Shown here piece by piece: positions 1 to 23,312 of a DNA stretch of 64,000 nucleotides. The DNA comes from Laetmonice hystrix (Eukaryota). Positions within the stretch are counted from its first letter, which is position 1. Every line of letters starts with the position of its first letter. The notes under the pieces are model-generated. The model was not told the origin of the DNA. It saw only the letters and a list, made by a program, of their open reading frames with translations, and ran no database searches. The translations under genes were made by a program, and so were the position numbers. Where the stretch lies: the NCBI GenBank assembly GCA_965235115.1, contig OZ249449.1, positions 2,294,001-2,358,000 of the forward strand, in the 5' to 3' direction.

Positions 1-1099
1 TTCAAGTGGCCCTCGGCCGGTGATAGCCACTCGACCCGTCCCATCGACATCTTCATCGTCTGCCGTACACCGGAAACGATAAACCGTCACTTCTGAAGGT
101 CATTCACCCATGGTAACGACCTCACGAAATCAGAGGTCACCCATGGTAACGACCTCGCGAATCAGAGGTCAGGGGCGGGGTTAGGTATGGGGATGGTAGG
201 TCAATTAATTAATACGGATTAATGAATTAGTCGATTATTTTTTACCCCGCCCAATTTTATAAGATGTTACCAAGATATAATGTTACTATCTCTTACTCTT
301 TAACAGGATTGAATCTCACTTTACAAACTCTTGCAAGGTGATAATTAATGTGTATAAATTAATGTTTTTTTTATTTAAGTTACGTCTAGATGCATTAAGT
401 TATTATTCTGTTCGGAAGCATGCATCGTTTGATGCCGTCTTCTCATACACCGTGGAGGATAATGAACTGGGAAACAATCTTATAATTTTGTTTTATATTA
501 GCCGTTATTTTTGCTTGTTTTCCGTTCATTCATTCTGGAACGGTTTAGCAACCAGTCCTGGAGATAAGCAGATTACACCAAGTCAAATTTTTCATTCAGT
601 CCATTTTAAATGCTTGCCTCCTGGTAATTGTTTTGTTGTACCGTAATGGCTGATAATGTTTCCGGTCCAGATACGACTGACAATCAATTAAACATTGTCC
701 AATCAAAGTGAGGTAAACAAACCTCGTGACAGCTGCTGCCATCGCTGTCGTGGCGACAGCTGCCGTGAAGCGGCAATAAGAACGCTGGCGTCCGTAGACA
801 ATAGCGTCTCTCTTCATAATGGTCGTCTGCTTACATACTGACCTTCAACTGGAACGCTTCTTTGTCTGTTACAGTCTACATGAACGCCAGGTGGCGCCCC
901 ACCCAGCTACTCTCGAGGGACACGTGACCACGCCAACACCTGCCAGTCGGCGCGAGAACATGTTCATCACACTGCCCTCTGGTGAGTAAAACAGACAACA
1001 TTCCATGGCGTAAATTCGGTACTTGGCCCCTAATTTACATCGATCCACCTTGTTTCTAAAGAACGCTAATAGATATAGACTCAAACACACCGTAACCAG

Positions 1100-1255
1100 G
1101 GGCCAGTTTTTCCCAAATTCTCAACTTGAGTAAAGCTTACTTAAGTAAACTAACAGGCTTCTGATTGGCTGGCCTGAGCAGACCAGCCAATCAAAAGCCT
1201 GTTAGTTTACTTAAGTAAGCTTTACTAAAGGTGAGAATTTTTGACAAACTGGGCC
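1100..1255. mobile_element. 156-bp palindromic MITE family A (PIF/Harbinger-like), full copy
   Basis: GGCCCAGTTTTTCAAAAATTCTCAACTTGAGTAAAGCTTACTTAAGTAAACTAACAGGCTTCTGATTGGCTGG-type arm plus inverted arm; flanks CAG/CAG. Confidence 0.85.
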
Positions 1256-4200
1256 CAGAGTTCCCTGTAGGGACCACCTATCCGAGGCTACCCATGAACA
1301 GCGCCGTAAATTTGAAGGGAATTTGACCGGAGGCCTCCTCCAGGAAATGTTGGCAATACATTTTTTTTTAATGTTGGAAATTTAGCCGAGACAGCTGTCT
1401 CGGCTGTCTCAATGCAGTTTACGTCCCTGCCTAAAGTCCCTCATCTCTTCATCCGATAAAGCACTAATCACAACAGATGACAAACGCCAAGATAAAACTA
1501 GCGTCCCATATTATATATCTTGTCGAATGAAATAAAACTCATAGAACATCTTGTGGTTGAGGCTCACCGGAATTACGATACATTCTGGTAGCGGAAGGGG
1601 GCGTGTTAGTATGACGGGTGGCCGCTAGGGGCGTGATTATCAGTTATTCAATACCTGGCGTTTACTGCAACTTCCGGTAGTATTAAAGACCCGGTAATTT
1701 CACTTGTATTGACGCACTCGGAGCAGATTGTATGGGAAGACGGAAATGGTTGTTATACAATATCCTATATGACAAAACGTCAGGGCAGACACCGTATCCA
1801 AGGTAACAATAGGACGCCAGCGGGTGACAATGGAGCCGTGTCATTGAACATTCATGAGGGTTTGTGTCAATACTGTAACAAAGAAAACCCTCCAATACTC
1901 GGCATCCCGTCTGAGGGACTCTGGGTGACGCGGGGGATTCTGGGTAAACGTTTAGATAGATCCCCATGGTAACATCGCTATGATAACAACAACAAATACA
2001 TTAATTTAAAAAAAAAACACCGCATGCATTTCAATCTCATCCTTGAGCTAAGGGGTCGACGATTTACCCCTGTGATAAACGCACTGATAATGTTAATGGT
2101 GATGACTTTACACCCCCAGTTAATTAAATAGAAGGGGTTGATGGGGTGGGGGCTCCATTAGGAGATCGGTGTGATAAGAAAAGGTAGGTCTATTGAATGA
2201 CCACTGTGGGTATACCTCAGTGTTTATGACGGGGGGAGTAGAGATGTGTGAAATTCCCCAACCACTCCCTCCATTATTTCCCAAGGCTAGAAACATTTTC
2301 AGATGTCAATCAAAGACGCCACGTTTTGAACCACCCGAGTGTAGTAGTATTTCCCTGTCGGCCACTCGCCTTCTGCCAACGTATAGGAGAATAATATTAC
2401 TATGTTTCTTGCCGTATAATGATCACATATTACGAGGGTCAAGCTCATATACACTATACAGTTTCCGGTGCAAACAAAGGTCGGTATGGGTATTACATAT
2501 TGATACATTGAACTCAAGGAGAGACACGTGTTTTCTGGGTATGGACAAAGATACGTTAGTGAAGAGGTTCCGCTCACCGTACCTATTCATTGATCAAATG
2601 CTGATCATGCAAGGTTAGCAGCTGTAGCCGTATGAATGTACCATGAATCAGCTCTAGGACGTTTCTTTATGACTGATATCATCTTAGCTAACATTTCCTG
2701 TGAGACTATGGCATGTCCAGGGTCAAATAAAACAAATATATTCATGTATATTACAACTACAGGTATGTTATTTGCACCCCGCGGTCAATGTCAAGGTTAG
2801 CCATGACTTTGTAACCAAGACAACGGAAGATCTCTAACTGAACGTCGAGACCATTGGTCGGTAAGGGGACTAGTGTTGTGATTTAAAGGTCTGTCCCCAA
2901 TCGCGCAGTCTGGGAGGGAGGGAGGTCTAGTCTCCGACATCTGAGGTCTTGATGGTTCTATCAGAACCTGGAGGATCACGTGACCGACATATGCTCCAGG
3001 TTACCTCCAATCCAGCCCCCCTGATGACTTAGGTTATGATCCACTATTTATTTTCTTCTATAATTTAATGTAATGTTTTGGCCATTTTCAATGTTTAAAA
3101 TAATTTCTGCGAATGTCTGCTTGGCATGGCAGGTTAGATATGCATGTTTCCGACAATAAAAACTCAATTTACGTATAGGTTGAATGATTAGATTTTATTT
3201 TATCGGAGCTTCTGTTACATGACCCCAGGTGGCACCACAAAATCGACCAGAATACAGGCCTGTGATACATAACATATTGGCTAAGATTTTCCAAGGAAAG
3301 TTAAGCAGATATTCTCTAATAATACACTGATATTATTGATCATATAGTGAACTTTTTCTCTGTGGTATTTGATGAGCACATTCAGGGGGGTTATATCCAT
3401 TCTTGGCCCTAGATACATTCACTCCATAGCATTTTGAGGGACAACCAGCAGCCCATTGGCTAAATAGGGGGTCATGACCCTTAGATCGCGTCGTAAACAG
3501 AACACTGGGAAAAGATGACAGCGGCTATATGTGATGGTGGACCCGTTCCAACGGTGTATACACACTGAGACACGTTTGTGGGCTAGTCGCCAATATCGTG
3601 CTGACAGCGGTCAGCCAATCTGGGCGTTGTCCTGACCTTATAAACGGGGACGCTATGACGTCATTGGCCGAGCACCAGAGACGGGGACTCGGGGAAATGG
3701 GTCCAATTCAAACAGAGAAACTAGAAAATGAAATACTTTCTTATATGATATTACTATGGATAGCAATGCGTGAAAGGTTATGTGGAGGAATGCAGGAGAT
3801 AATGTGGAACCTTGTCCATGTCCTCCCTGTCAGCTTTGACCCCGTGACCCCTACCGCCACCTGGCAGGTCCAGCTGGTACATGGCGTCCACTCCAACCGT
3901 TGCTTCCTGCCCCGGGACGCGGTTCTCCTGACGTCAGTGACGTCTTGGTGTTTGTTTTCTGACGACCACCACAGGCCGACAACAGAACGATGTCGTGTCA
4001 CTGGTTGCTATGGTGATGGCGTCATCCAGCTGGCGTTCGTCACGGTCTCTGACCAGACGTGGCGTACGATGGTCAAAGAAAGCATTGCTCGGAATGGTAA
4101 ACATTGTCATCACCCAGCGTGACATCCCGTTTGTTCTCATTATGACGTAACGTTAACGCGTCTTTGAACGTGGTAATATGACGTCACCACAGGGAATATT

Positions 4201-4938
4201 CCCAGGGGCCCAAGGAATTGGAAGGGTGAACTCCGTAACTTGTTATTTAGAGCGACTTGTCGACAACGCCAGCCCTTGAAGACTGATTCAGTATTGTTTG
4301 GTCTGTCACGGTGCTCTCACCCAATAATAGGGTGAATGTCAAAGTGAGGTTGAGTTTCAAAGTAACGGTGAGTATCAAAGTGACCTCCCACTAGTCGTAC
4401 TCTCACTGAGTCGTACCAACCAGTCCTGTCTGAATTCGTTTCCCACGCTGTCGGTATATCCGCCCTAACATCAAAGAGCACTGACGTCATAATTAAAGCG
4501 TTCACGCAGTCATACATTCCCTCGTTATCATCATGCCAAGCATGTCCTCCGTTACATGTCCTAGTCACCATGGTTACCGATAATTAGCTAATAACTGGTG
4601 GGTTGTCAATGACATGTTCGTCGGGCCAGAGCAGGAGGCCCGGGACCGTGTATTGACAACTCGGCCCGGGACCGTGTATTGACATAATTAATTATCCGGG
4701 ATGTACACAGTTAGCAGATCCCTCAACGGCAGCCTCTAACCCCGACGGCCCACCTGGCGCCCCCACCGGGAGCCTCCCACCCGGCGGCTGGCCTCAGTAC
4801 TCGGCGGACCGGAAGTCCCTGGGAGCCCCGCCGCCGGCGATCTCACACACCGGATATAAGCTTGTCCTCATCACGGAGTAGTTACTCCGCCATGCTAACA
4901 GTCCACCGAACTGGGAGCAGGGATGAGAGCTAGGTGTA

Positions 4939-5560
4939 GGGCTATTGGCAGGGCTATTGGCAGGGCTATGGGCAGGGCTAGAGGCAGGGCTAGGGACAGG
5001 GCTAGGGACAGGGCCAGCGTAGTGGCAGGGCTATGGGCAGGGCTATGGGCAGGGCTAGGGACAGGGCTAGGGGCAGGGCTAGGGGCAGGGGCAGGGGCAG
5101 GGCTAGGGGCAGGGCTAGAGGCAGGGCTAGGGACAGGGATAGGGGCAGGGGCAGGGCTAGGGGCAGGGCTAGGGGTAGGGGCAGGGCTAGAGGCAGGGCT
5201 AGGGACAGGTCTAGGGGCAGGGGCAGGGCTAGGGGCAGGGCTAGAGGCAGGGCTAGGGACAGGGCTAGGGGCAGGGGCAGGGCTAGGGGCAGGGGCAGGG
5301 CTAGGGGCAGGGCTATGGGCAGGGCTAGGGACAGGGCTAGGGGCAGGGCTAGGGGCAGGGGCAGGGCTAGGGGCAGGGCTAGGGACAGGGCTAGGGGCAG
5401 GGCTAGGGGCAGGGGCAGGGCTAGGGGCAGGGGCAGGGCTAGGGGCAGGGGCAGGGCTAGGGGCAGGGGCAGGGCTAGGGGCAGGGGCAGGGCTAGGGGC
5501 AGGGCTAGGGGCAGGGCTAGGGACAGGGCCAGCGTAGTGGCAGGGCTATGGGCAGGGCTA
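4939..5560. repeat. G-rich hexamer array (GGGCTA/GGGGCA/GGGACA)n
   Basis: Visible tandem hexamers; source of the spurious GA/RG/LP-repeat ORFs. Confidence 0.92.
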
Positions 5561-5562
5561 AG

Positions 5563-7450
5563 GGCAGTAGCCGGGAACCTGTCCGGGTGTGTGCGGTCCG
5601 CCGAGTCCGGGCAGGGTGCGGGGGGTCGACCAGTCGGTAGCCGGGAACCTGCCCGGGTGTGTGCGATTTCATGCCTCCGTTGGGTTAGGCCATGATGATA
5701 CCTTTGGTTTACGATGGGACTGATCTGATACAATTTATTGTTTGGTTGTTCATCCCATTCAGCCTGCCATCTGTTCTTAACGTCTGCCGGGTCCGGGCAG
5801 GGTGCGGGGGGGGGGGGCGGGGTGTCGGCCGGTCGGTAGCCGGGAACCTGGCCGGGTGTGTGCGGTCCAAGGGCCGGGTCTGGGCACGGGGCGGGGTCGG
5901 CCGGCCGGTAGCCGGGAACCTACCCGGGTGTGTGCGGTCCAAGGGCCGGGTCCGGGCATGGGGTGGGGGGGGGGGGCGGAGGTCGGCAGGTCGGTAGCCG
6001 GGAACATGCCCGGGTGTGTGCGGTCCAAGGGCCGGGTCCGGGCAGGGGGCGGGGTCGGCCGGTCGGTAGCCGGGAACCTGCCCGGGTGTGTGCGGTCCAA
6101 GGGCCGGGTCCGGGCAGGGGGCGGGGGGTCGGCCGGTCGGTAGCCGGGAACATGCCCGGGTGTGTGCGGTCCAAGGGCCGGGTTCGGGCAGGGGGCGGGG
6201 GCGGGTCGGCCGGTCGGTAGCCGGGAACCTGCCCGGGTGTGTGCGGTCCAAGGGCCGGGTCCGGGCAGGGGGCGGGGGGTCAGCCGGTCGGTAGCCGGGA
6301 ACCTGCCCGGGTGTGTGCGGTCCAAGGGCCGGGTGCGGGCATGCCGGGGGCGGGGTCGGGGGGTCAGCCGGCCGGTAGCCGGGAACCTGCTCAGGTGTGT
6401 GCTGTCCAAGGGCCGGGTGCGGGCAGGGACAGGGGGCGGGGGGTCAGCCGGCCGGTAGCCGGGAACCTGCTCAGGTGTGTGCTGTCCAAGGGCCGGGTCC
6501 GGGCAGGGGGCGGGGGGTCGGCCGGTCGGTAGCCGGGAACCTGCCCGGGTGTGTGCGGTCCAAGGGCCGGGTGCGGGCATGCCGGGGGCGGGGTCGGGGG
6601 GTCAGCCGGCCGGTAGCCGGGAACCTGCTCAGGTGTGTGCTGTCCAAGGGCCGGGTGCGGGCAGGGACAGGGGGCGGGGGGTCAGCCGGCCGGTAGCCGG
6701 GAACCTGCTCAGGTGTGTGCTGTCCAAGGGCCGGGTGCAGGCAGGGACAGGGGGCGGGGGGTCGGCCGGTCGGTAGCCGGGAACCTGCCCGGGTGTGTGC
6801 GGTCCAAGGGCCGGGGCCGGGCAGGGGGCGGGGTCGGCCGGTCGGTAGCCGGGAACCTGCCCAGGTGTGTGCGGTCCAAGGGCCGGGTTCGGGCAGGGAC
6901 AGGGGGCGGGGGGTCGGGCGGTCAGTAGTCGGGAACCTGCCCAGGTGTGTGCGGTCCAAGGGCCGGGTGCGGGTGGGGACAGGGGGCGGGGGGTCGGCCG
7001 GTCGGTAGCCGGGAACCTGCCCGGGTATGAGCGGTCCAAGGGCCGAGTACGGGCAGGGGGCGGGGGGTCGGCCGGTTAGTAGCCGGGAACCTGCCCGGGT
7101 GTGTGCGGTTCAAGGGCCGGGGCCGGGCAGGGGGCGGGGGCGGGGGGTCGGCCGGTCAGTAGCCGGGAACCTGCCCAGGTGTGTGCCATCCAAAGGCCGG
7201 GTCCGGGCAGGGGGCGGGGAGTCGGCCGGTCAGTAGCCGGGAACCTGCCCGGGTGTGTGCGGTCCAAGGGCCGGGTTCGGGCAGGGGGCGGGGGCGGGGG
7301 GTCGGCCGGTCGGTAGCCGGGAACCTGCCCGGGTGTGTCCGGTCCAAGGGCCGGTTCCGGGCAGGGGGCGGGGAGTCGGCCGGCCGGTAGCCGGGAACCT
7401 GCCCGGGTGTGTACGGTCCAAGGGCCGGGTCCGGGCAGGGGGCAGGGGCA
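5563..7450. repeat. GC-rich minisatellite, ~74-80-bp unit, interrupted at ~5655-5783
   Basis: Unit ccggtcggtagccgggaacctgcccgggtgtgtgcggtccaagggccgggtccgggcagggggcgggggg, more than 20 copies. Confidence 0.92.
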
Positions 7451-7828
7451 GAGACAGGGATACCTTATGTTTTTGTTTTCGGTTTGTGGCTCCCCTTTCA
7501 ATTTCGTAGAGACGGGACGCTGGGGGGGGGGGGCTGGAGACGGGGGGCTTGGATGGTGAGGGGGGAGGGGCTGGGGGGCAGGAGGAGGTATGGGGGCTGG
7601 TGCACCTTGAACCTCTCTCGCATGTGTCAACCCAACGAGTCTATACTCGTTGGTCAACCTAAACATTCTCACTTTAATATCATGCATCCTTTCCTGCTTT
7701 GTCAGTTTGAGAAGTTCTTTCCTGCTTTGTCAGTTTGAGTTCTACAAACCATTAGGGAGAAAGGAGGTTAATTACCGAAAAGTATGTTAATTAGCGACAC
7801 CTGTGTTTGGCTGATTGTATTCCTTGCC

Positions 7829-7899
7829 TACCGGAAGTGGCGTGCATGTACCGGAAGCACTGTTTATGTGCCGGAAGTTGTAGGTTTGTACCGGAAGTA
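7829..7899 (+). promoter_or_regulatory. Cluster of four ETS-binding motifs (RCCGGAAG) with 20-bp periodicity
   Basis: CCGGAAG at 7831, 7851, 7871 and 7891 with dissimilar spacers; single ACCGGAAGT sites at 1670(-), 4808 and 9566. Confidence 0.7.
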
Positions 7900-8156
7900 G
7901 TCTAACCTTTTGGAAAAGATGTAAACAAGTTAGTTGGGTGTGCGTAGGGCGGTGGTATTGAAGGTGGGAGGGGGCAGGATGTGGAGGGGGGCAGGATGTG
8001 GGGGGGCGGTGCCTGGTGCCCAGCCATGGGAGCCCGCCAGATCAACACAAACTATGCGCGAGGAATGCAGCCTGGCGATGGTTACTCCTTCATGGTAATC
8101 TCCCCATGAATCTGAAGGGAGAAGGTCGAGTTAGGAGTTAGCCAGGGTACGGATAA

Positions 8157-8202
8157 CAGATAGATAGACAGATAGACAGATAGATAGATAGACAGATAGA
8201 TA
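8157..8202. repeat. (GATA/GACA)n microsatellite
   Basis: Direct inspection. Confidence 0.85.
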
Positions 8203-8536
8203 ATCTTTAATACAGTGACATGTGTGCATGTATAGCATAGTACATTTAAACAAAACATGACAATTTAAAAAAAAACGTTAGCAATGTGCCAATCACACCT
8301 AGCCCACTTGGGCCTGCAAGTGACTTTGCACAGAAATTACAATGAATATGAACCTCTAGGTCACATTTATATAAACAGAAGAATATATACTATTATTTGT
8401 AGATAGTTCTTCCTGTTCTAAAGAAAGCATTTGGAATAAGTTGTGCTGTCCTTTAAACCACGTGATCATTCAATACGTCTGACAATAAAATTTCTCTTAG
8501 ATCATCATACATTGTAGCAGATAACATTTAGTGGGG

Positions 8537-8960
8537 ACGTCAGGAGATTGGCAGTAAGGGTAAGGGCCAGGTTTGGAGATTAGCAGTAGGACGGGTTAGG
8601 GCCAGGTCAGGAGATTGGCAGTAGGAGGGTTTAGGGCCAGGTCAGGAGATTGGCAGTAGGAGGGGTTAGGGCCAGGTCAGGAGATTGGCAGTAGGAGGGG
8701 TTAGGGCCAGGTCAGGAGATTGGCAGTAGGAGGGGTTAGGGCCAGGTCAGGAGATTGGCAGTAGGAGGGGTTAGGGCCAGGTCAGGATATTGGCAGTAGG
8801 AGGGGTTAGGGCCAGGTCAGGAGATTGGCAGTAGGAGGGGTTAGGGCCAGGTCAGGAGATTGGCAGTAGGAGGGGTTAGGGCCAGGTCAGGATATTGGTA
8901 GTAGGAGGGGTTAGGGTCAGGTCAGGAGATTGGCAGTAGGAGGGGTTAGGGTCAGGTTTG
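8537..8960. repeat. 35-bp minisatellite containing one TTAGGG per unit
   Basis: gtcaggagattggcagtaggaggggttagggccag, ~12 copies. Confidence 0.9.
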
Positions 8961-9783
8961 GGGCTAGGAATAATGGTAGATTATTAATTATCAGCAGCAA
9001 ATTTCGTGAAGCGTTACCATGGGAATGTACCTGGCAACTGGTCGGTACTGGAGGTCGGTGTGGAGTTAGTTCATTCTCCCACCGCCAGGTGGGGGTAGAG
9101 AATGGAGACTGATCTCATGGAGAGTAGTAACGCGCGTATGGAGATCAGCTCTGGGAAAGTTCAGGGAGAAGGAGGGGCATATTTGTCCAATTTCTTCAAT
9201 GTTCATTATTATCCATCATTTAAAATCGATGAAATTTTACTTTATGCACAGACTACATCAACTATAAAGTAGCCGAACTGTATTCTTAGGGTTATGACAT
9301 GTTTTCTTCCACTAACACTCCTTTGAGAACAAAATAATGGCAAGCTTTACCATTTTACTTTACTATAACATTATTAGATATACCTTCAAACGATATAGTA
9401 TGTGATGGTTGCGGGCCCGGGCCCGTCGATCCGTAGCGGAGTTCAGCAGGATGGAATGTAAAACACGAGCTCAAGGACGCAGCGCGAGCTGCACCGCCCC
9501 CACCCGGCCACCGCCAGTACTAACGTGGCTGGTGTTTCCGCCCGCCCATTGACTGCTGACAATAGACCGGAAGTGGTCTCGAACCGAAGGCTGACCTCTC
9601 GGCGGCCTGCCCTCAGTTTATCTCCCGCCTCCTAGAATCCCTCAGTGTATAGGCCTAGGGAATCGTAAAGACGTCATAACGCGTTCAGTAATGCATTAGG
9701 GGATACAACTCCAGGCTTGTAAACACGCTCAAAATGATATGCACCCCTTTAACCTTGGAGAGCACATGCTTATAGTGTCTTTC

Positions 9784-9872
9784 TCTGATTCTGTCTGTCT
9801 CTGTCTGTCTGTCTCTCTCTGTATCTGTCTCTCTCTGTCTCTCTCTCTATCCGTCTCTGTCTCTGTCTCTCT
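9784..9872. repeat. (TC/TCTG)n microsatellite
   Basis: Direct inspection. Confidence 0.85.
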
Positions 9873-9956
9873 CCCCAATCTCCCTTCTTATTTCTTATTG
9901 AACATTCCATTGAAGTTTGCTGTTTTTAACCCATGACGTTGTTGCTATGGTTACAG

Positions 9957-10246
9957 ACCCGCGGGAGTGGAGCCGAGAGGACGTGTCCAACTGGTTAATC
10001 TACATGAGAGTTACTCACAACCTGACCGACATCCAGCACGATCGCTTCCTCATGAACGGCAAGGCATTGTGCCTCATGAACGCAAACATGTTCTCCTACC
10101 GCGTGCCCGTCGGCGGCAAGTTTCTCTATAGAGACTTCAGAATGAGGCTCAGCCGGGCACTCTCCACGCAGCCGCAAACGCCCACTTCCGTTTCCGCTGC
10201 AGCAGCTACATCCGGGCCTCCAGTAGCCTCCCCGGCTAGGGCTTAA
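9957..10246 (+). CDS. edl: PNT/SAM (Pointed) domain-only protein, Mae/Ets-domain-lacking-like; terminal coding exon (or a single 99-aa ORF from ATG 9947)
   Basis: Translates DPREWSREDVSNWLIYMRVTHNL..DRFLMNGKALCLMNANMFSYRVPVGGKFLYRDFRMRLSRAL, closely matching the Drosophila Mae SAM as recalled (DPRDW..MNGKALCLM..RVPVGGKMLYRDFRVRLARAM). Acceptor ttacag at 9951-9956; stop 10244-10246; no ETS domain follows. No upstream exon identified with confidence. Confidence 0.85.
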
Positions 10247-10648
10247 CACAAAGCAATCAAGCTGTGGGCAACAAGGACACAGACTGTGTATAGGATATTC
10301 AAACGACAGTTCTGTGTTGTGCGGGGTTTTCCTGGTAGGCTGCTATAGGCCCTACCTTTTTGAAATCGAATGAATAAACTCTATCCAGAAATTGGTTATA
10401 GATTCTAGGCTTGAATAACGCATCGGCCAAACGGATTCGGAGCGTAATCGCAAGCTGATTCCTCTTGAAATCAACTTCACTGACTCTGAGGGGCGCTGAG
10501 TGTCCAGGGTTCCATGGCAACGTTAACATGTTAGAACCATACATCATTTGAGTACTGATTGTCCAGGGTTCCAGCCTGGCAACGTTAAATGTTGACAAGA
10601 CGCGCAGAAATTGACCGTTTCCTAATGTTGTGACGCTTGGAGACGGAC

Positions 10649-10748
10649 AATCTGATTAAAATTAGGTCTTAGTTACTTCGCATGCGCTCCATACTAGGAA
10701 AACAGCCGGGAGAGACGCGGAATACCAAGATCTAATTTTAATTAGATT
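10649..10748. repeat. 100-bp inverted repeat (22-bp arms) downstream of the Mae-like stop
   Basis: aatctgattaaaattaggtctt / aagatctaattttaattagatt. Confidence 0.6.
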
Positions 10749-13652
10749 GGGAGACGGATGAACCTGTTTGTCCTTTAAGGATTGAACAATTAACAGTTAC
10801 TGAAACAAGTTCGTGCGCAGTTCGAAACTCTTCCTACCTGAGCAGAAACGACGTTTTGCCTGTAGTCTACGGTGTCATTGTCAGTTTTTAAACTGTCAAC
10901 GGGTAAGGTATCTTTGAGATCTTTGTGAACATGTCATTAAGATTAGCATTATTATTGTGAGAATCTTTCCTCGCCAAACTAAGCTAAATGTTGCTCGGGG
11001 TCACACAAGGCTACTGAACTTGTTTTAAAACATCCGCGGGAGCATCTTAATAAGAAAGTCGACTTATTCTGTTTGTGTGCAGACAAGACTGACGCAAATT
11101 GTCATGGCAACGGTGGTTGGTACCAGGATGTTGGTGCCGCCCCTGGCGGTGATAGACAGTTTTACTGATCTCAGTCGTGTATAAAGTGTGCATGTCCAGT
11201 CATTTCAGTGTTTGTGTCAATGTCGTCAAGTCTACATTAAGATCTCCTTATATGGGCATCCAATCTACAAGGAGACCAGGGGATGTTTCAACAAGCGCAT
11301 CAGAATGTCCGAACGGTTGTAGGGTCTGGTACGTTTGGTCTGTCGTCGGTCGGAGGGTCGGACGCGCTTATTGAAACAGCCCCTGTACTATCGACTGTTC
11401 AATGTTCCTTTAGTTGATATCGTCAGTAGCGAGTACGTGACCAGTAAAAGTAAAAATGTCGTATGTCTTAATTATGACGTCATTATTGTTATGAGTGGCA
11501 CGTGACCACGCGACATTTGAATGGCTTAATTATGACGTAATTATTGAAATGAGTGACACATAATTTTGGGGCTGGCCCCCAAATAAAATGTCGTGTCCAG
11601 TCGACCAGTACTGTGTTGGTCTAATCGTGGAGTTATTTATTGTGAAACATATTTATACAGACAAAATAATAAACAATTAAGTGGTGAATGAAAGTGATAT
11701 TGTTTGTGTTTTGTACGGAATCTATCTGAATATATAAGTTGTCCCTGGCAACACTGCCGAATAGATTATAGCAGCTTCGGCGGCGCCACCATGGGAGCAT
11801 GGCGTGTGGTATACGGGGACTGGGAGCATGGTGTGGTGCTTGGGGGTTGGGTATATGACGGCCTAGATTCGGGTTGATTTAGCTCGGGAGGGGGGGGGGG
11901 GTATTAGTTCTGGGAGTTGAGTATTGAATTATTTGGGCCTATGACCATTATAGTTTAGGATTTTGCATAGATGTCTAAAGCTGGTTAGCACTGTTTTGAA
12001 CACCGATTGACAGCATCGAGGTGCAGACACCGACTGGAAATAGCAGGTGGACGGGGAGGGGGTCAACCAACTGGACATCACCATGAAGGCCCGAGTGCAC
12101 CCTGGCAGTGAAGGGCATTGATCACTCCTTTATTGAATCTGGGGTATACGTTCACGCACTTATAGGCGCGTCCGCCTATAAGCGGATTTTATCGTTTTTT
12201 GAGGGAATTTCAGAATAAAAAATCATCAGATATAGGCGCTTGGGCCTATATCCGGGTATAAGCACACCCTCAATAATATAAACGCACCCCAATATTCACA
12301 TAGCCGCAAATACACCCCCCCCCCCCAACCCCAATGGTAGAGTGCAATATTATTGCCACCGACAGCCCTAGCTTCGAGTGAAAAACATGGGCCCGGGCTA
12401 TGTCCATCCATGTTCTCAGCCGTACGGTAACACAACCTATAGGCCTATACAGGCGCATGTTTACGTATAGGCGCATGCGCCTAAAAGTTCGGCAATGCGG
12501 TAACAGGGCTGCGGAACTCCTAAATGCAATCAGCCGTTCGCAGCTCGTGTCAAAAATGATCCTCCAAAATAACCTTCTCCGCCATAGACCTAATGGGTAG
12601 ATCTAATACTGGAAGCCGTCTCGACTTAAACGAGGTTTGATTTCGGTATGCCCTGCTGCCGGGGTGTGTGTGGGGGGGGGGGGGGGGGGGGGGGTTGCAC
12701 GATGTTACAGAAAGAAAAATCGATCGATCAAGATAGGCCTATTAAGTCCATCGATCGACAAAGAAAAAAGAAAAAATATGTTATTGTGATGTCCTTTACC
12801 AGCCATCGCAAAAATATACACATGTCTTCTGCATGAAGAACTGCCATGTCTGCCTCCAGGGGCTGCATGTGTGAAAGGTTTGTCAGTCAGTTCTTTCCCG
12901 AAGGCCGGTGGTTTCATCCGGGTACTCTGGATTGATATGACTGGCTGTTGCAAGACGTAAAACCATGCCAAGAACTGCCAAGATCAAGCTGGCCAGACGC
13001 AACGGAAGCCCTCTACCCTCTCAAGTCCTCTGCTTGTAGATTAATTGGTACACTTGTTAAAGATGTCTGTTGTCGCACTGTCCTGAGAGTCAGCAACCCA
13101 TGCTGCCATCTGGCGGATAAATACCGAACTAATCGACCTTGAATGAAGGGACTGCCATTGCAAACATGTCTGTCATGGGCCGTCCATAAATTACATAACG
13201 CTATTCATTTCTGACCAAAATCTGACCCCCCCCCCAGCCCCCACCCTTGTATTTTTTTGTAGGCTAATGGGGCTTTATAATGGGCCATAACGCTTGGACA
13301 TAGGCCTAAGGCCTATACACACCCACCCCGACACACACACACACCGCCCCCACCCCGACACCCCTCATGGCCATGCGTGTAGTATACACCCCTACAGTGA
13401 TCTGGAAAAACCTATAAGTCGAGCTTTTGAGTTAGGCCCATTTTTGGACTTAGGCCTACTAGGTTTTGCCCTTTCATATAGTCCGCAATTCAAGGTTCTT
13501 GACCTGGAAAAACCTAGCGTTTGCAGCTTAATGCCAGGAAGACTGGTGTTCTCTGACCAGTGCGAAAGCCGGGCCGCCACCTGACGGCAAAGAATGGTAC
13601 TTACGCCGCCTAGCGGACTAACTAGTAACTAGAGATGACCCAGAAAGCGGCT

Positions 13653-13666
13653 GTGTCCATGGCAAC
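13653..13666 (+). promoter_or_regulatory. RFX X-box-like motif at the putative JHY promoter
   Basis: GTGTCCATGGCAAC (reverse GTTGCCATGGACAC). JHY is a ciliary gene and RFX controls ciliary genes, but similar half-sites are common in this window. Confidence 0.4.
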
Positions 13667-13672
13667 GTGTAA

Positions 13673-13786
13673 ATGAACCTTGGATGGAATCGATTTGGTG
13701 GGCGATGTTCAGTGCTTGTACCGGATATTTTGGATTTTTTACCCCGGATTACGATGAAGATTGAGAGTCTCTACCACGCAGTGAAG
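13673..13786 (+). other. JHY: Putative first (5'UTR or short coding) exon of JHY
   Basis: Strong donor GAAG|gtaagg at 13786; ATGs at 13673 and 13754 are in frame with the acceptor at 14974; X-box-like motif just upstream. Confidence 0.45.
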
Positions 13787-13932
13787 GTAAGGTTTATCTA
13801 CACTAGCTGACTATAGAGAGGCCCATTAAAAACTTTAGTTTTCCCTTCCGTATGAGGCCTAAATGATGATAAAAATAAAATCACATCCAGTCACACGGGC
13901 ACTGGTCCAGTGCCAGGGCCGCGACCGTGTAA

Positions 13933-14451
13933 AGGCCGGTGTCGCGGTCTCAGATCTCCGTGGTCTCAGATCTCCGGGAGGTTAGCTGCATTGCCGTGTG
14001 TTCTAGTCTAACTATCCGAAATATCAGCTCTCAGTTGAGTCACACGTAATAACTCTCATCTCCTCTACGATACTTGGTTTACAGTTTACCTATCCAGACT
14101 GTCCTTTAGTCTTGTTTGGAAGAAAACTCCACCGCCCATCAGCTAGCAGACGACCGGAGGTGTGAGCCCAAACAGCGACTCGCGCGTGCTCACTTAGTCA
14201 GATATAGCATCTAAACAATAGGAAACCATGCCCCCGGAGTTCTGAGACCAACGGAGATCTGAGACCGCGACACCGGTTTATAGTCCGTCGGCCGACCATC
14301 GGCCGATCATCGGCCGACCATCGCTCGACGTCAGGTCAAAGTTCACGCAGGCTTAACTCCCAGCGATCGGTCGATCGACGGCCGGATCGCTGGACTATAA
14401 ACGTTCAGCGATGGTCGACCGATGGTCGGCCGACGGACTATAAACCGGCCT
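13933..14451. mobile_element. Fused pair of MITEs in the putative JHY first intron (element 1 ~13933-14276, element 2 ~14273-14451, sharing CCGG)
   Basis: Inverted repeat ccggtgtcgcggtctcagatctccg / cggagatctgagaccgcgacaccgg, and ccggtttatagtccgtcggccgaccatcgg / ccgatggtcggccgacggactataaaccgg. Confidence 0.75.
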
Positions 14452-14973
14452 TAACCAAAGACCGACTAGACTGACTCTATATACTGTAATCGTCGGTCTT
14501 TGGTGTAACCACATCAAACTAATTATGAATTGATGAGTTACCTGTTCACGGTCGGGCGTTGTTGAGGATAAGTTTACGAAAATACTGAGCAGAGATTTTT
14601 CATGACCTCGGGGCTAGGCCTAGGCGTAGCCGTGGCGTAGGACATCTAACGTTATAGACTAGTCAGTGTAACTGTGTATAAAGTGTAAGCCTAGCTCTAT
14701 CTTTAGTACTGAATTTATTTTAATTTTTATTCATAACGTAGTCCCAAGTGACATACTTTTTTTTTAAATATTATAAATCACAGTACATGCACATTGTAGT
14801 GATTGAGACCATGTTCTGTATACAGGCACCGTTCTGACCGTGACTTGACGACAGCCGATAGTTACCATGACACCAGGCCATGACATGATCAGTACAAGAT
14901 GGGGGAGAGTTATCACGCCCCAGGAGGAGGAGGGATCATAACCCACAACCTTCAACTCCTATCTCTCCTCCAG

Positions 14974-17040
14974 GGATCTCCTCCAGGTGGTCAACAGGAG
15001 GTCATGGATCCACCCATTCAGAAAATCTACGTTGATTCTCCAGTGTTTGAACTGGAAGATGATTCCAAGTACAAATATGTCAGCACTAATGTGGATGACT
15101 TTGATGAGGATCAACACAAGGCGTTCCTCCAGGCTCGCTCCGGGGAGGACGTTACGGCAGCAGGGGGGTATGAAGACAATAAGGGTTTCCATGGTAATGA
15201 GGTGGAGGCCGAGTTGCCAGGCAGGAAAGACACGGTCAGACCCGGCCTTGTGCCGTCCCGTCCGTTCGGTCGTCGCGAGGAGGAGGAAGAAGATCTTGAT
15301 GAATTGAGGCGGGAGGAGGCGTACCAGGAAGGATTGAGACGTCGTCTCTCCGAACAGAATCGTGACGCGGAACAGCTCCAGATACCACGTCTTGATCTGT
15401 CTGACGATGAGGATAACCCTCGAGATTCCCTAGATCCATCACTAGGGGGCGCTGGTGGAGGTAAGATCCATGAGATTAGTCTCCGTGACTCGCTGGATTA
15501 CGTACAGCAGCGGGAGGACGAGGCTCGCCTCCGACACCTGATGGGGGATGACGAACGGGCTGGCTTCAATCTACATCTCAATGACCAACTCCAGGACGAT
15601 AGTGGGCCTCATCAATCAGCACCCCCTGGTGTATGGTCTCAACAACTCCAACAACAACTGATGGCAGAGAATCAGAGTGCGCGCCACCAATCGGACATAA
15701 ACACAGGCCAAACTGAGCCTCACGGACAGTTAGCACAGATGTTTACTATGCAGCAGCCTGGGCCAATGCAACATTATTATACAGATACCCAGGCCCCAGT
15801 GTATGTGCCAAGTCAGCATCCCAATAGTTTTATTTATCAGAGACCACCTGTAGAGTATTATCCAGAGGTAGGGGCCTACGGTCTAAGGTCCCACCAACAG
15901 GGGCCAAGTATTCAGGCCCTAGAACCTGGATATAATCAGCTTCAACCTGTTCCACCTCCACATTTCAGTCCCCAACACCAGGCCACGTATAGAACTGTAC
16001 CTCAGCTGCCCCAGCACCAGCCCACACATCCTCAACCAGAAACTTACTATACAGATTCCAGGGTTCCATCCCAGAACTATGATCAACCACAATATTCACC
16101 TTCCAGGGCCTCATATCAACAATATGAACGTCAAAACCCACTTCCTCCCCATCAATATATGCCCAGTCCAGTGGCTCCACCTGGTGTACAGGTCATACCC
16201 CAACAAGAAGAGCGTAACCATGACAATGCAGGGCCTTCAAGCCCTGTCAAGTATCGAGCTCGTGGGAGCCCAGCTTATACCGATGTTCCGCTCAAAGAAA
16301 AACCAAAAATTGATTTTTTAGAAAGAAACAAAAAAGACTATACCAGGGTTGCCCCTGGGGCTAAGCAGTCCTATGGACAACTTTTTACGGAAAAGAAGAA
16401 AATTAAGGAAAATGTTCCACCACCTAAAACCAAAGAGAAGACAAAGCCCGGTTCAAGTCCTGTGAAGGCAAGCCGCACCCAAGAGGTGACACGGGAAGAT
16501 ATGTTTCTTGTCAAGGATGGCGAACATCCCAACACAACCGAGAATTTCTGGTCGCAGCGAGCAAAAAGTCTGGCCGAGGCAAAGAGAGAGCGATCATCAG
16601 GGGTGCGGAAGACGAAACGTCCACCTCTGCAGAAGTATCCGAGCGAAAGCAGGGTTGATGACATGAAGAGTGTCCACTCAGCTCCGCCTCAACTACAGCC
16701 GATACAACCACCACCACGACAGGCGTTTACTGAACCAATCCGCTCTGAGCTTGTACCCAGCGAGGTGGTCGCAGGGGTCGGTCAACCCATCACCCATACA
16801 ATATACACAGATGATGGTCAGAGAGTTAGTGTGGATATAAACCTGAAACTGATGAGTCCAGGACCAACACTCCTCCACCAGCCTCAACCATACCCCGGCC
16901 TGCCCTCTGGTAGCATTCATCAGTACTACCACCCACAGGGGGCACCACTGATGGGGCCTGTACAGCAGCCACAGCTCCCCCTAGGGACCATTCAACGAAA
17001 CACGCCAGGACTTCCATACCAACCTGTCTACTCACAGCAA
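14974..17040 (+). CDS. JHY: JHY large exon (acidic, then Q/P-rich low complexity)
   Basis: 716-aa ORF; polypyrimidine acceptor ctcctccag ending 14973; donor CAA|gtaagt at 17040. Confidence 0.8.
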
Positions 17041-21187: not shown

Positions 21188-21261
21188 CAGACCACCGGGC
21201 TGTCTGTACGTCTATAACTGCATGTCCAGTATAGATGTAGTACCTAAAGCTATATTATCAG

Positions 21262-21360
21262 GGTCCAGTTTTTCAAAAATTTTCAACTTGAGTAAAGCTT
21301 ACTTAAGTAAACTAACAGGCTTTTGATTGGCTGGTCTGCTTAGGCCAGGTATTTACTTAA
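21262..21360. mobile_element. MITE family A, right-truncated copy
   Basis: Left arm plus centre. Confidence 0.75.
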
Positions 21361-22526
21361 AGAAAGGCAAAATATTAGCTGTTCAGCTGTCTGTACATGT
21401 GCTTCTTACCTTATAGCTTCTTTCCAGCCCAAAATTAAACCCAATAGGCTGTTCAGAATAGAGAATTCGATAATAGAAAGAGGTGTGCTCTATAGAAGGC
21501 ACGAATATTGGAGTAGACCACCATTTTTGCCACGCCCATCGTATTAACCAATCAAAAAAGAGCGGGATTCCAGGACTCATGACGTCACTAAGTCGAACCA
21601 CAGCCCTGCCGCCATTCATTCAGGGGTAAAACTTGGTATCCTTCATACGCGTCTACACTCCTCCTATACAACTTTACAAGTCGTTTGGACTTTAGTCCAA
21701 GTTTTAAAAGTACTGGAGACTAGTGGAGTCGAGACAGGGAGAGGTTCATGATAATGTTATAGACTGTCGCTCAGGCAGCTTGAGCGACATGCAGTCAGCC
21801 CCCGTCCCCAGCATTGCTTTGGGGCTGTTCGCGGCTGACCGTCACCCTCAGCTGCAGTCTGAGACTGTCAGTCCTACAGTCAGGCCTTGTTCCTGGAGAT
21901 ATCACGTCACTTGAGCTCACCGCGAAATGAGCCCGTCATATGAGCCCCATCGGGTGGTCGCTGAGCCTGCCCGGGGTGAGCGAGGGAGCGGTGGCCGGTC
22001 ACTCGCCCGTTCGCTTACTCGCTCAAACTGCCGCCGGCCCGCCGGCCGCTTGGTGCCGGGGCTTGTAGGGGACCTGGGCCGGTCCGTTCGGCCCAGAAGT
22101 GTAGGGGGCCTCGCCCTCGGCTGGTCGGTTCGGCCTATGCTTGTTGAAGCAAGGGCCTCAGCCGGTAGAGAGCGGGATAGGGATCGGCTGCACTCAATTC
22201 GAAAAGACCGAAGACTAGCGCTATAAATAGCTATGTTGGCGGCTCTCGGTGCCTACTGCTACCGCGTCACTGCTTAGACACCTTGTACCATAGTCTATGG
22301 TGTCCTGCCACATGGAATGGGGTACGCACAAGTGACGTCATTTGCCAAGTGGGGAACCCCATGTTCTTGGCACAAGATGGCAGAGAACGGCCGGTGAGGA
22401 ATAGCGGTGGATTTTTAACGATTACTTTTTTGATCATTTTTTTCTGATTTTTTTAGAGGTCCAAGGTGCAAGGTATAGGATTGGTCTACCAGTGCAGCCC
22501 TATGTGATATAAATATTTTTCGTTGC

Positions 22527-22573
22527 TTTAAGTAAGCTTTGCTCAAGTTGAGAATTCTTTGAAAAACTGGACC
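22527..22573. mobile_element. MITE family A right-arm fragment
   Basis: taagtaagctttgctcaagttgagaattctttgaaaaactggaccc. Confidence 0.7.
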
Positions 22574-23312
22574 CTGGGCCTGGCTGCCAGACAATTTATA
22601 CAGACACTGGAGCCGGGGGGCGGCGGAGGCGACAAGGGGAGAGGCAAAGATACTCCCCTCTCACAACTGTTAAGTGAGGGGATTGGTGTATGCTTATCAA
22701 CAACGGCATCAACAAATAAAAATCTAAACAAATGTGCTAAACGGACTTTTGTTTTTGAATGTTGGCGTGGATCAGGATATGGTTCATAGTTATTGGTAGG
22801 AGCCAAAGCGGGAGGGGGAGGATGAGGGCAAGAAGGCTTACCGTTTTGGTCATCAGCCTTACGTTGGATCTATTGGGGATCACCGAACCCTCCTATTGAA
22901 ACATTGGGCGGAGCCAAAGGGGCAGGGGAGGATGAGGGTTTACAATTTTAGTCGTCAGCCCTACGTTGATTGGATCTATTGCTCCCCCTCCCCTCCTATT
23001 CAATATATCTTCCACATTTTTCAGAATACATGTAGGTGGATTGGGAACTTCTAAATATTCCAGAGAAACTTTACAAATGGCACCAAGTTTGACCCAATTT
23101 ACATGTCAATTTCGGGAATCTAACTTTCCTTTCCCATGAACGCACCATTTGTAAGAAAACCTGAGAAAGCAAGAAGTGAGACTTTGGTATACGTGGAACA
23201 TATCGTTCTGCATAAAATGGTAATGGGGTTTTATTTTCTATGCTGATATTTTAATTAGTAGCTTTGTTGTATTTTTTGTACTAAGAATTTATGTCCAAGC
23301 ATATAGTAGTTA

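What the first reader, a model, noticed from the sequence alone, without database searches (positions are those of the whole stretch)
7829..7899. Four ETS sites in exact 20-bp phase, with unique spacers, upstream of a Mae-like gene
Seen: CCGGAAG starts at 7831, 7851, 7871 and 7891. Only the core (TACCGGAAG or TGCCGGAAG) is shared and the 11-bp spacers differ, so this is not a simple tandem repeat and looks like selection on motif and spacing. Further ACCGGAAGT sites lie at 1670, 4808 and 9566; I noticed no comparable cluster elsewhere in the window. Established: Drosophila mae is a transcriptional target of the Ets factors Pointed and Yan, and Yan/TEL polymerise through their SAM domains. Inference: sites about two helical turns apart could form a landing pad for SAM-polymerised ETS repressors or cooperative activators, closing a feedback loop on the gene for the depolymerising factor in a non-arthropod.
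Basis: partly seen in the sequence, partly recalled or inferred. Interest (0 to 1): 0.8.

Follow-up and report, generated by a model that had tools for sequence, protein, structure and literature searches.

The report
Phased ETS-site array inside Mae-like intron
Four perfect binding motifs for ETS-family transcription factors sit exactly 20 bases apart inside (not upstream of) the long intron of a Mae-like gene in an unidentified invertebrate, and they look like a small tandem duplication whose motifs, but not the DNA between them, have been kept, which makes this a plausible but untested regulatory switch.

Summary
CCGGAAG starts at 7831, 7851, 7871 and 7891 on the + strand. The block is single-copy in the 627-Mb genome and cannot be chance. 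The placement is wrong. A spliced transcript contig joins window 981 to 9957. The array therefore lies in an 8,975-bp intron of the Mae-like gene, 2.06 kb before the SAM exon and 6.85 kb after exon 1.

The array probably arose as a 20-bp tandem quadruplication, in a 380-bp island made of short tandem duplications. The seven core columns are identical in all units, while eight spacer columns are 29% alike, which is chance level. Simulated uniform neutral decay never gave this pattern. All CCGGAAG sites of the 64-kb window lie in this intron.

My best reading, at about 0.5, is an intronic cluster of ETS sites that regulates the Mae-like gene. The binder is undetermined: GABPA-, Ets1/Pointed- and ETV6/Yan-like genes are all present.

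Against this, there are no relatives to test conservation and no chromatin or binding data. The genome also holds at least nine ordinary minisatellites with ACCGGAAGT in every unit. The scan index holds no other ETS-array note. It is a new member of a known kind, of moderate interest.

The parts
7829..7908 (+). Array of four 20-bp units, each beginning T-A/G-CCGGAAG. The ETS cores are at 7831-7837, 7851-7857, 7871-7877 and 7891-7897. The full 9-mer ACCGGAAGT is at 7830 and 7890.
   Evidence: Core columns are identical in 42/42 pairwise comparisons and spacer columns in 14/48.
7620..8000 (.). A 380-bp island, about 50% G+C, lying between two G-rich minisatellites and built from five short tandem duplications. 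These are 7626/7653 (17 nt, 76%), 7689/7717 (23 nt, 100%, contains TTTCCTG, which reads CAGGAAA on the other strand), 7760/7779 (19 nt, 84%, contains GTTAATTA), the ETS array, and 7964/7981 (17 nt, 88%).
   Evidence: sequence
819..981 (+). Coding part of exon 1 of the Mae-like gene, from the ATG at 819, with donor G|GTGAGT at 981/982. The 5' end of the exon was not determined: the transcript contig carries 403 nt before the junction.
982..9956 (+). Intron of 8,975 bp (GT...AG) that contains the array and every other CCGGAAG of the window.
   Evidence: Run X4 has a 982-nt contig whose positions 404-982 equal window 9956-10534 and whose preceding 30 nt equal window 951-980. No X4 contig lies on 7580-9955.
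9957..10534 (+). Exon 2 of the Mae-like gene. It holds the SAM/Pointed domain and the stop codon (coding sequence to 10246) plus at least 288 nt of 3' UTR.
   Evidence: Pfam SAM_PNT, E = 7.9e-16. PDB best match Mae 1sv0_C. The joined 150-aa product aligns with full-length Mae-like proteins across the junction LPS|DPREW.
1670..1678 (-). Isolated consensus ETS site ACCGGAAGT. Weaker ETS-like cores lie nearby, CCGGAAT near 1568 and GCGGAAG near 1591.
4808..4816 (+). Isolated consensus ETS site ACCGGAAGT in a 62% G+C patch just before the large minisatellite.
9566..9574 (+). Isolated consensus ETS site (GACCGGAAGTGG) inside a single-copy, CpG-island-like patch at 9400-9700 (CpG observed/expected 1.0), about 390 bp before the SAM exon.
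4921..7500 (+). G-rich minisatellite with 74/154-bp units and 73% G+C, with G on the sense strand. It flanks the island on the left.
8539..8957 (+). A 35-bp minisatellite of 12 copies on the right-hand side of the island, about 540 bp from its edge.

Best explanation
The block is a cluster of four high-affinity, same-orientation ETS-factor binding sites inside the long 5' intron of a Mae-like (SAM/Pointed-only) gene.

Origin (inferred). A 20-bp unit carrying one ETS site was duplicated in tandem to four copies, in a stretch that is prone to short tandem duplications. That origin fixes the exact 20-bp spacing.

Maintenance (inferred from sequence statistics). Since then the 8-11 nt between sites have drifted to chance-level similarity. 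The seven core bases of all four sites, each holding a mutable CpG, and the spacer lengths have stayed intact. This points to purifying selection on the motifs and on their spacing.

Function (inferred, not shown). The array acts as an intronic cis-regulatory module through which one or more ETS factors control transcription of the Mae-like gene. The three further consensus sites in the same intron would act with it. Neighbouring sites about 1.9 helical turns apart would favour cooperative occupancy by a multimeric ETS complex. That complex could be a GABP alpha2-beta2 tetramer on each pair, or SAM-linked ETV6/Yan competing with Ets1/Pointed. Which factor binds cannot be decided from sequence.
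For: The sites and their phase are exact.

The block is single-copy in the genome.

Chance expectation is about 1e-8.

The core is identical in 42/42 pairwise column comparisons, against 14/48 (29%) for the eight spacer columns, where chance gives 25-27%.

In 400,000 simulations of uniform neutral decay, a run of 7 or more fully conserved columns never appeared once pairwise identity fell to 0.37 or below. It appeared at 3e-5 when identity was 0.44.

Young ACCGGAAGT minisatellites elsewhere in the genome lose their cores while their spacers stay alike, for example L078. ETS cores are therefore not intrinsically protected from mutation.

The local island is a chain of short tandem duplications of different ages.

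All 7 CCGGAAG and all 5 ACCGGAAGT sites of the 64-kb window lie in this intron. With the array counted once, 4 of 4 loci fall in 14% of the window, binomial P = 3.9e-4.

The gene is Mae-like, and fly mae is described as a direct Yan/PntP2 target (PMC3355116).

GABPA-, Ets1/Pnt-, ERG- and ETV6-like genes exist in the genome.

GABP tetramers prefer in-phase ETS pairs, about 2 turns being optimal, and such pairs can arise by a ~22-bp tandem duplication (PMC9481613). TEL/Yan bind paired ETS sites cooperatively through their SAM domains (PMC5900712).
Against: No orthologous sequence from a related species could be found, so conservation is untested.

Distant Mae-like loci carry no phased CCGGAAG.

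There is no chromatin, binding or reporter evidence. No run is on record as RNA, and I take X4 to be transcript-derived only because one of its contigs skips the GT...AG intron.

Genome-wide, same-strand CCGGAAG pairs are no commoner than a control pattern (612 against 613 for gaps of 0-21; 46 against 36 at 20 bp), so this genome shows no general use of the spacing.

The genome is rich in minisatellites, including 9 or more with ACCGGAAGT in each 19-26-bp unit. Tandem ETS arrays therefore arise here without any need for function.

The neutral-decay test assumes equal rates across columns and was applied after the motif had been noticed.
Confidence: 0.5

Rival explanations
1. The array is a neutral relic. 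A small 20-bp minisatellite, one of very many in this genome, happened to carry an ETS-like word and does nothing. The intact cores would then reflect unequal mutation rates or luck.
For: The genome is full of minisatellites, and 9 or more have ACCGGAAGT in every unit. The array sits in an island of short tandem duplications flanked by large minisatellites. Genome-wide there is no excess of phased CCGGAAG pairs. There are no transcripts, conservation or occupancy data.
Against: Uniform decay to the observed spacer divergence never leaves seven columns intact in four units. The cores contain CpG, which should decay faster if methylated. Young ETS minisatellites do lose cores (L078). Three spacers kept exactly the same length despite saturated substitution. 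The window's other consensus sites also fall in the same intron (P = 3.9e-4).
Confidence: 0.28
2. The four sites are a landing pad for SAM-polymerised ETV6/Yan repressor, in competition with Pointed/Ets1. That would close a feedback loop on the gene for the depolymerising factor Mae.
For: The gene is Mae-like. Fly mae is described as a direct Yan/PntP2 target and feeds back on both (PMC3355116). TEL/Yan bind paired ETS sites cooperatively through SAM-SAM contacts (PMC5900712). An ETV6-like Ets domain lies at C11:1096209 (107 bits), with a SAM_PNT exon 7 kb upstream. An Ets1/Pnt-like gene is present.
Against: The position is intronic, not upstream. The motif flanks fit every ETS class (PMC2905244). 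The half-SAM exon of the ETV6-like gene is not clearly TEL-type. In flies the best-studied Yan element is an overlapping 'supersite', not a 20-bp ladder (PMC5900712). Nothing here tests binding.
Confidence: 0.15
3. The array is a GABP-type module. Two GABP alpha2-beta2 tetramers each bridge an adjacent pair of sites, giving a constitutive enhancer, or a TATA-less alternative promoter or initiator for the SAM exon or for an unannotated transcript.
For: GABP tetramers prefer in-phase pairs, with about 2 turns optimal, and a tandem duplication of about 22 bp is enough to create such a pair (PMC9481613). A GABPA-like gene lies at C19:5.95 Mb (76.8 bits to the GABPA PNT domain; Ets exon). ACCGGAAGT is the class-I optimum. 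A second four-site 20-bp array, at C5:16976525, lies in a promoter-like, CpG-rich setting next to an AAGATGGCG word.
Against: No transcript contig starts at or covers 7580-9955 in run X4. An alternative first exon here would not supply an in-frame start for the SAM domain (reading). The island's CpG observed/expected ratio is only 0.53. I did not look for a GABPB gene with a leucine zipper.
Confidence: 0.17

Closest known systems
In-phase ETS site pairs that recruit the GABP alpha2-beta2 heterotetramer, for example the TERT promoter hotspot mutations and ~22-bp tandem duplications (PMC9481613)
   Same: Consensus CCGGAA(G) sites lie in the same orientation about two helical turns apart. A tandem duplication of a ~20-bp segment holding one ETS site creates the phased partner. 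A GABPA-like gene is present in the genome.
   Different: There are four sites rather than two, spaced 20 bp rather than 22 bp. The location is intronic rather than a core promoter. This is a germline feature of an invertebrate and not a somatic cancer event. No binding or activity data exist.
Yan/Pointed-responsive enhancers of Drosophila, such as the eve MHE and argos, and the mae feedback loop (PMC5900712, PMC3355116)
   Same: High-affinity ETS sites cluster in a gene of the RTK/ETS network. The target gene encodes a Mae-like SAM-only protein. Pointed-like and ETV6/Yan-like factors are encoded in the genome.
   Different: Fly elements mix sites of different affinity, orientation and spacing, and the key Yan element is an overlapping pair. 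Here there is a regular ladder of four near-identical sites. The organism is not an arthropod, judging by the spread of protein hits. Regulation is untested.
Ordinary minisatellites carrying ACCGGAAGT in each unit, in this same genome (for example C10:4788290, C19:15620469, C3:43085469)
   Same: Units are head-to-tail with a constant period of 19-26 bp and one ETS consensus per unit. The probable mode of origin is the same.
   Different: Those arrays are 80-100% alike over the whole unit, and their cores mutate as often as their spacers. In the array studied here the spacers are at chance-level similarity, the cores are perfect, and Tandem Repeats Finder does not detect it.
GGAA microsatellite enhancers bound by EWS-FLI and ETV6 (PMC9928584, listed; not read)
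   Same: Repeated ETS cores act together as one element.
   Different: Those have a 4-bp period with low-affinity cores and no spacers. Here full 9-12-nt consensus sites are separated by unique spacers.

Membership tests
Homotypic cluster of ETS binding sites (cis-regulatory module) | Three or more consensus sites within about 100 bp, more than composition predicts | tested here: met
   There are four CCGGAAG sites in 67 bp. The 64-kb window holds 7 sites in total, and the chance of the phased quartet is about 1e-8 genome-wide.
Homotypic cluster of ETS binding sites (cis-regulatory module) | Motifs evolve more slowly than the DNA between them | tested here: met
   This was tested only by comparing the units within the array. 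The core is identical in 42/42 comparisons and the spacer in 14/48, and neutral-decay simulations give P < 2.5e-6. No cross-species test was possible.
Homotypic cluster of ETS binding sites (cis-regulatory module) | Conservation of sites in orthologous loci | not testable with these tools
   No close relative was found in the protein or contig collections. The best hits are 63%, 44% and 66% identical. Distant Mae-like loci L032-L043 lack phased sites.
Homotypic cluster of ETS binding sites (cis-regulatory module) | Factor occupancy, open chromatin, reporter activity | not testable with these tools
   Only contigs of five runs were available, and none is on record as RNA or chromatin data.
GABP heterotetramer paired site | Two ETS sites in helical phase (multiples of about 10.5 bp) | tested here: met
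   A 20-bp spacing equals 1.9 turns for each adjacent pair. The preferred geometry is taken from PMC9481613.
GABP heterotetramer paired site | GABPA and a tetramer-forming GABPB encoded in the genome | tested here: inconclusive
   GABPA-like PNT and Ets exons lie at C19:5.95 Mb. I did not search for GABPB.
GABP heterotetramer paired site | Location at or near a transcription start | tested here: not met
   The array lies 6.85 kb inside the intron, and no X4 transcript contig covers 7580-9955. Contigs cannot exclude rare transcription starts.
Yan/ETV6 polymer pad closing a Mae feedback loop | The target gene encodes a Mae-type SAM-only protein | tested here: met
   The best PDB domain hit is Drosophila Mae at 81.6 bits, against about 41 bits for TEL and Yan. 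The 150-aa product aligns with Mae-like proteins.
Yan/ETV6 polymer pad closing a Mae feedback loop | An ETV6/Yan orthologue with a polymerising SAM domain is present | tested here: inconclusive
   The Ets domain scores 107 bits to ETV6. The SAM first-half exon 7 kb upstream is ambiguous between Ets1 and ETV6. The polymer-interface residues were not examined.
   The spliced contig places the array inside intron 982-9956. An intronic enhancer would still be compatible with the loop.
Simple minisatellite | Head-to-tail units of constant period | tested here: met
   The spacing is 20, 20, 20.
Simple minisatellite | Similarity over the whole unit | tested here: not met
   Spacer identity is 29%, which is chance level. 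Tandem Repeats Finder reports no array at score 30.
Dispersed repeat / transposable element | Multiple copies in the genome | tested here: not met
   Window 7760-7960 and window 9400-9700 each match only themselves in G000. The spacers are not similar to those of other ETS minisatellites.

The most novel reading that the evidence does not exclude
The Mae/ETS feedback loop known from Drosophila is older than arthropods. In this animal it would be wired through a regular four-site ladder that reads the polymer state of the ETV6/Yan repressor against Pointed/Ets1. The depolymerising factor would then control its own gene through a site geometry created by a 20-bp tandem duplication and since held by selection.
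Probability: 0.12. Interest if true: 0.75.

Novelty: new member of a known kind. Interest (0 to 1): 0.35.

Why it matters
If the array is functional, it gives a compact and easily mutated handle on how an ETS network regulates its own SAM-only modulator outside arthropods. According to PMC3355116, the Mae node has not been identified in mammals. It would also be a natural germline example of phased, cooperative ETS sites built by a short tandem duplication, the same route seen somatically at the human TERT promoter. If it is not functional, it shows that a minisatellite-rich genome can produce regular arrays of textbook motifs without any function.

Tried and rejected
1. Dispersed repeat or transposable element: rejected. 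The block and the CpG-rich patch at 9400-9700 are single-copy.

2. Genome-wide preference for 20-bp ETS spacing: rejected. Counts are 46 against 36 control at 20 bp, and 612 against 613 for gaps of 0-21.

3. Segmental duplication between the patches around 4808 and 9566: no convincing alignment.

4. Kinship of the array's spacers with other ETS minisatellite families: chance level, with 966-1567 of 2000 shuffles scoring as well.

5. Cross-species comparison failed.
   - The best Mae-like hits are 63% identical or less.
   - Their loci (L032-L043, host DNA in metagenomes) have no phased CCGGAAG.
   - The neighbouring 716-aa ORF has one hit at 44%.
   - A NAT9-like gene peaks at 66%, with hits spread over many phyla, so the organism stays unidentified.

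6. Expression data.
   - No run is on record as RNA.
   - Run X4 behaves like a transcriptome and gave the splice junction, but nothing over the array.
   - Run X5, labelled 'organism B', gave one 268-nt contig 100% identical to the 3' part of exon 2, so it offers no outgroup.

7. Structured RNA genes in 1-14000: none in Rfam.

8. Gene context of the second array on C5: no long ORFs within 10 kb on either side, and I did not pursue it.

9. An alternative first exon at 7934-8096: considered from the sequence and dropped, because no in-frame join to the SAM exon exists and no transcript supports it.

Full report
**Observation.** The + strand at 7829-7908 reads as four 20-bp units: TACCGGAAGTGGCGTGCATG, TACCGGAAGCACTGTTTATG, TGCCGGAAGTTGTAGGTTTG and TACCGGAAGTAGTCTAACCT. 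CCGGAAG starts at 7831, 7851, 7871 and 7891. The window's only other copies are at 1671 (- strand), 4809 and 9567. The 9-mer ACCGGAAGT occurs five times against 0.51 expected, and 0 of 100 shuffles reach five. Tandem Repeats Finder does not report the block even at score 30. The repeat finder sees three overlapping 27-nt copies, 74-78% alike, only because each holds two cores.

**Chance and uniqueness.** With the window's own site frequency, four CCGGAAG at one fixed spacing are expected about 1e-8 times in the 627-Mb genome. For any 7-mer at any spacing of 8-50 the figure is about 0.01. The 201 bases around the array match only themselves in the genome. Genome-wide, CCGGAAG-N13-CCGGAAG occurs 46 times against 36 for a reversed control. 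Pairs with gaps of 0-21 occur 612 times against 613. This genome therefore shows no general preference for the spacing. Only three places chain three or more sites at 20 bp:
- this array;
- a 40-bp satellite on C8;
- a second array on C5, described below.

**Location.** This changes the picture. Run X4, from the same sample as the DNA runs that hold this stretch, holds a 982-nt contig. Its last 579 nt equal window 9956-10534, and the 30 nt just before them equal window 951-980. The genome has G|GTGAGT at 981/982 and an AG at 9955-9956. Joining 819-981 to 9957-10246 gives an open 150-aa product. It aligns with full-length Mae-like proteins from other animals right across the junction: LPS|DPREW here, LPLDPREW or LPIDPREW in them. 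The SAM/Pointed domain is confirmed by Pfam at 7.9e-16. Its best solved relative by a wide margin is Drosophila Mae, 1sv0 chain C, at 81.6 bits, against about 41 bits for the TEL and Yan SAM domains. The gene is therefore Mae-like. The array, however, lies inside its 8,975-bp intron, 6.85 kb after exon 1 and 2.06 kb before the SAM exon, and not upstream of the gene. No X4 contig covers 7580-9955. Contigs cannot exclude rare transcripts.

**Origin.** The array sits in a 380-bp island of ordinary composition between a 2.6-kb G-rich minisatellite (4921-7500) and, about 540 bp further on, a 35-bp minisatellite (8539-8957). The island is itself a chain of short tandem duplications of different ages:
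- 17 nt twice (76% alike);
- 23 nt twice (100%);
- 19 nt twice (84%);
- the ETS array;
- 17 nt twice (88%).

The genome also holds many ordinary minisatellites whose 19-26-bp units each carry ACCGGAAGT. There are 127 paired matches against 62 for the control, including arrays on C3, C4, C10, C12, C13, C19 and C20. A 20-bp tandem quadruplication is thus the simplest origin, and it explains the exact phase.

**Evidence for constraint.** What is not ordinary is the pattern of decay.
- The seven core columns are identical in all 42 pairwise comparisons.
- Five flanking columns match in 18 of 30 comparisons.
- The eight central spacer columns match in 14 of 48 comparisons (29%), where chance gives 25-27%.

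I simulated four copies decaying uniformly. A run of seven fully conserved columns never appeared in 400,000 trials once pairwise identity fell to 0.37 or lower, and it appeared at 3e-5 for identity 0.44. Each core holds a CpG, which makes neutral survival less likely still. In young arrays such as L078, cores mutate (CCGAAAG, CCGGGAG) while the spacers stay alike, so ETS words are not intrinsically protected. All three spacers also kept their length. The array's spacers do not resemble those of the other families.

The C5 array (C5:16976525-16976590) looks like an intermediate stage. It has four sites at 20 bp, with the fourth core changed to GCGGAAGT, and its spacers are 40-58% alike.

The caveats are that the test was made after the motif was noticed, that it assumes equal rates across columns, and that it compares units within one genome rather than species.

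**Context.** With the array counted as one event, all four CCGGAAG loci of the window fall in the intron, which is 14% of the window (binomial P = 3.9e-4). The site at 9566 lies in a single-copy patch with CpG observed/expected of 1.0, about 390 bp before the SAM exon. The intron as a whole therefore looks enriched for optimal ETS sites.

**Possible binders.** The genome has eight SAM_PNT exons and about thirteen Ets-domain genes. By best solved relative they include:
- a GABPA-like gene (C19:5.95 Mb);
- an ERG-like gene (C7);
- an Ets1/Pointed-like gene (C19:4.17 Mb);
- SPDEF-like genes;
- a gene whose Ets domain is clearly ETV6-like, at 107 bits against 78 for the next family.

The ETV6-like gene has a SAM exon 7 kb upstream whose first half is ambiguous between Ets1 and ETV6.

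The literature leaves the choice open.
- Class-I factors disfavour C at -3, and ETV6/7 form class IIb (PMC2905244). The A or G found at -3 in these sites suits either class.
- GABP tetramers prefer in-phase pairs with about two turns optimal, and a ~22-bp tandem duplication is enough to create such a pair at TERT (PMC9481613).
- TEL/Yan bind paired sites cooperatively through SAM contacts (PMC5900712).
- Fly mae is described as a direct target of Yan and PntP2, and the Mae node had not been identified in mammals (PMC3355116).

Twenty bp is 1.9 turns. Neighbouring sites face nearly the same way, but the first and fourth sites are about 100 degrees apart. That geometry fits pairwise bridging at least as well as a straight polymer.

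**Verdict.** The stated position is wrong, and the SAM-polymer model is one of several untested readings. I put:
- about 0.28 on a neutral relic;
- about 0.17 on the GABP-type module, including its alternative-promoter form.

Conservation could not be tested because no close relative exists in the collections searched. The scan's index holds no other ETS-array note for this genome, only the same stretch and the neighbouring Mae-like gene. This is a new member of a known kind of element: a clean, testable candidate rather than a surprise.

Noticed in passing
G000:C5:16976525-16976590 (L012 1501-1568; L079 326-393): A second array of four ETS sites at exact 20-bp steps: CCGGAAGT three times, then GCGGAAGT. 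Its spacers are 40-58% alike. It lies in a CpG-rich, promoter-like stretch next to an AAGATGGCG word. It looks like a younger stage of the same kind of array.
   Followed up: partly
G000: C3:43085469-885, C10:4788290-540, C13:2821758-873, C13:26902420-504, C19:15620469-638, C4:31410063-365, C12:3504060-116, C19:14287664-719, C20:15001946-2000 (L070-L078): At least nine ordinary minisatellites have a perfect ACCGGAAGT in every 19-26-bp unit. Several share the unit ACCGGAAGTAGGTGATACCAC-like sequence, which also occurs as dispersed two-site copies 22 bp apart. Paired matches number 127 against 62 for a reversed control. Whether ETS words are truly over-represented in this genome's minisatellites is open.
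   Followed up: partly
window 819-981 + 9957-10246: Two-exon model of the Mae-like gene giving a 150-aa product. It is supported by a spliced contig and by alignment with 142-173-aa Mae-like proteins from an insect and from unnamed Logan and ENA contigs. SAM-only clusters whose commonest labelled phylum is Echinodermata also appear in the ESM Atlas, so Mae-like proteins seem not to be confined to arthropods.
   Followed up: partly
window 4921-7500: A 2.6-kb minisatellite (74/154-bp units, 73% G+C, strong G excess on the sense strand) lies inside the same intron. It could form G-quadruplexes or R-loops during transcription of the gene.
   Followed up: no
window 8067-8498 and 9170-9408: Contigs of the DNA runs show two haplotypes differing by about 4-7%, counting substitutions and small indels, in unique intronic DNA. 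Over 7638-7968, which includes the array, only one contig is seen, with a single difference near its end. This is too weak to call reduced diversity.
   Followed up: no
G000:C19 2.30, 4.07, 4.17, 5.95 and 11.38 Mb: The Mae-like gene, an Ets1/Pointed-like gene, a neighbouring Ets-domain gene, a GABPA-like gene and one further Ets-domain gene all lie on the same chromosome-scale contig. Four of them fall within 3.7 Mb.
   Followed up: no
window 14899-17049: A 716-aa open frame rich in Q and P, with no Pfam family and only one distant homologue (44% over 32%). It is an unexplained gene or long exon next to the Mae-like gene.
   Followed up: partly
window 1100-1260 and many other places (e.g. 17139-17369, 21200-21326, 22415-22594): A palindromic, MITE-like element recurs through the window. 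Its translation repeatedly gives ...[15 protein letters not shown].
   Followed up: no
window 63086-63679: A single-exon NAT9-like N-acetyltransferase of 197 aa. Its best hits are only 49-66% identical and are spread over molluscs, fishes, a hemichordate, echinoderms and others, so the source animal has no close relative in the protein collection.
   Followed up: yes
window 10059-10324: Run X5, labelled as a different organism and study, holds one 268-nt contig 100% identical to the coding end and 3' UTR of the Mae-like gene. It may be the same species under another label, or carry-over.
   Followed up: no
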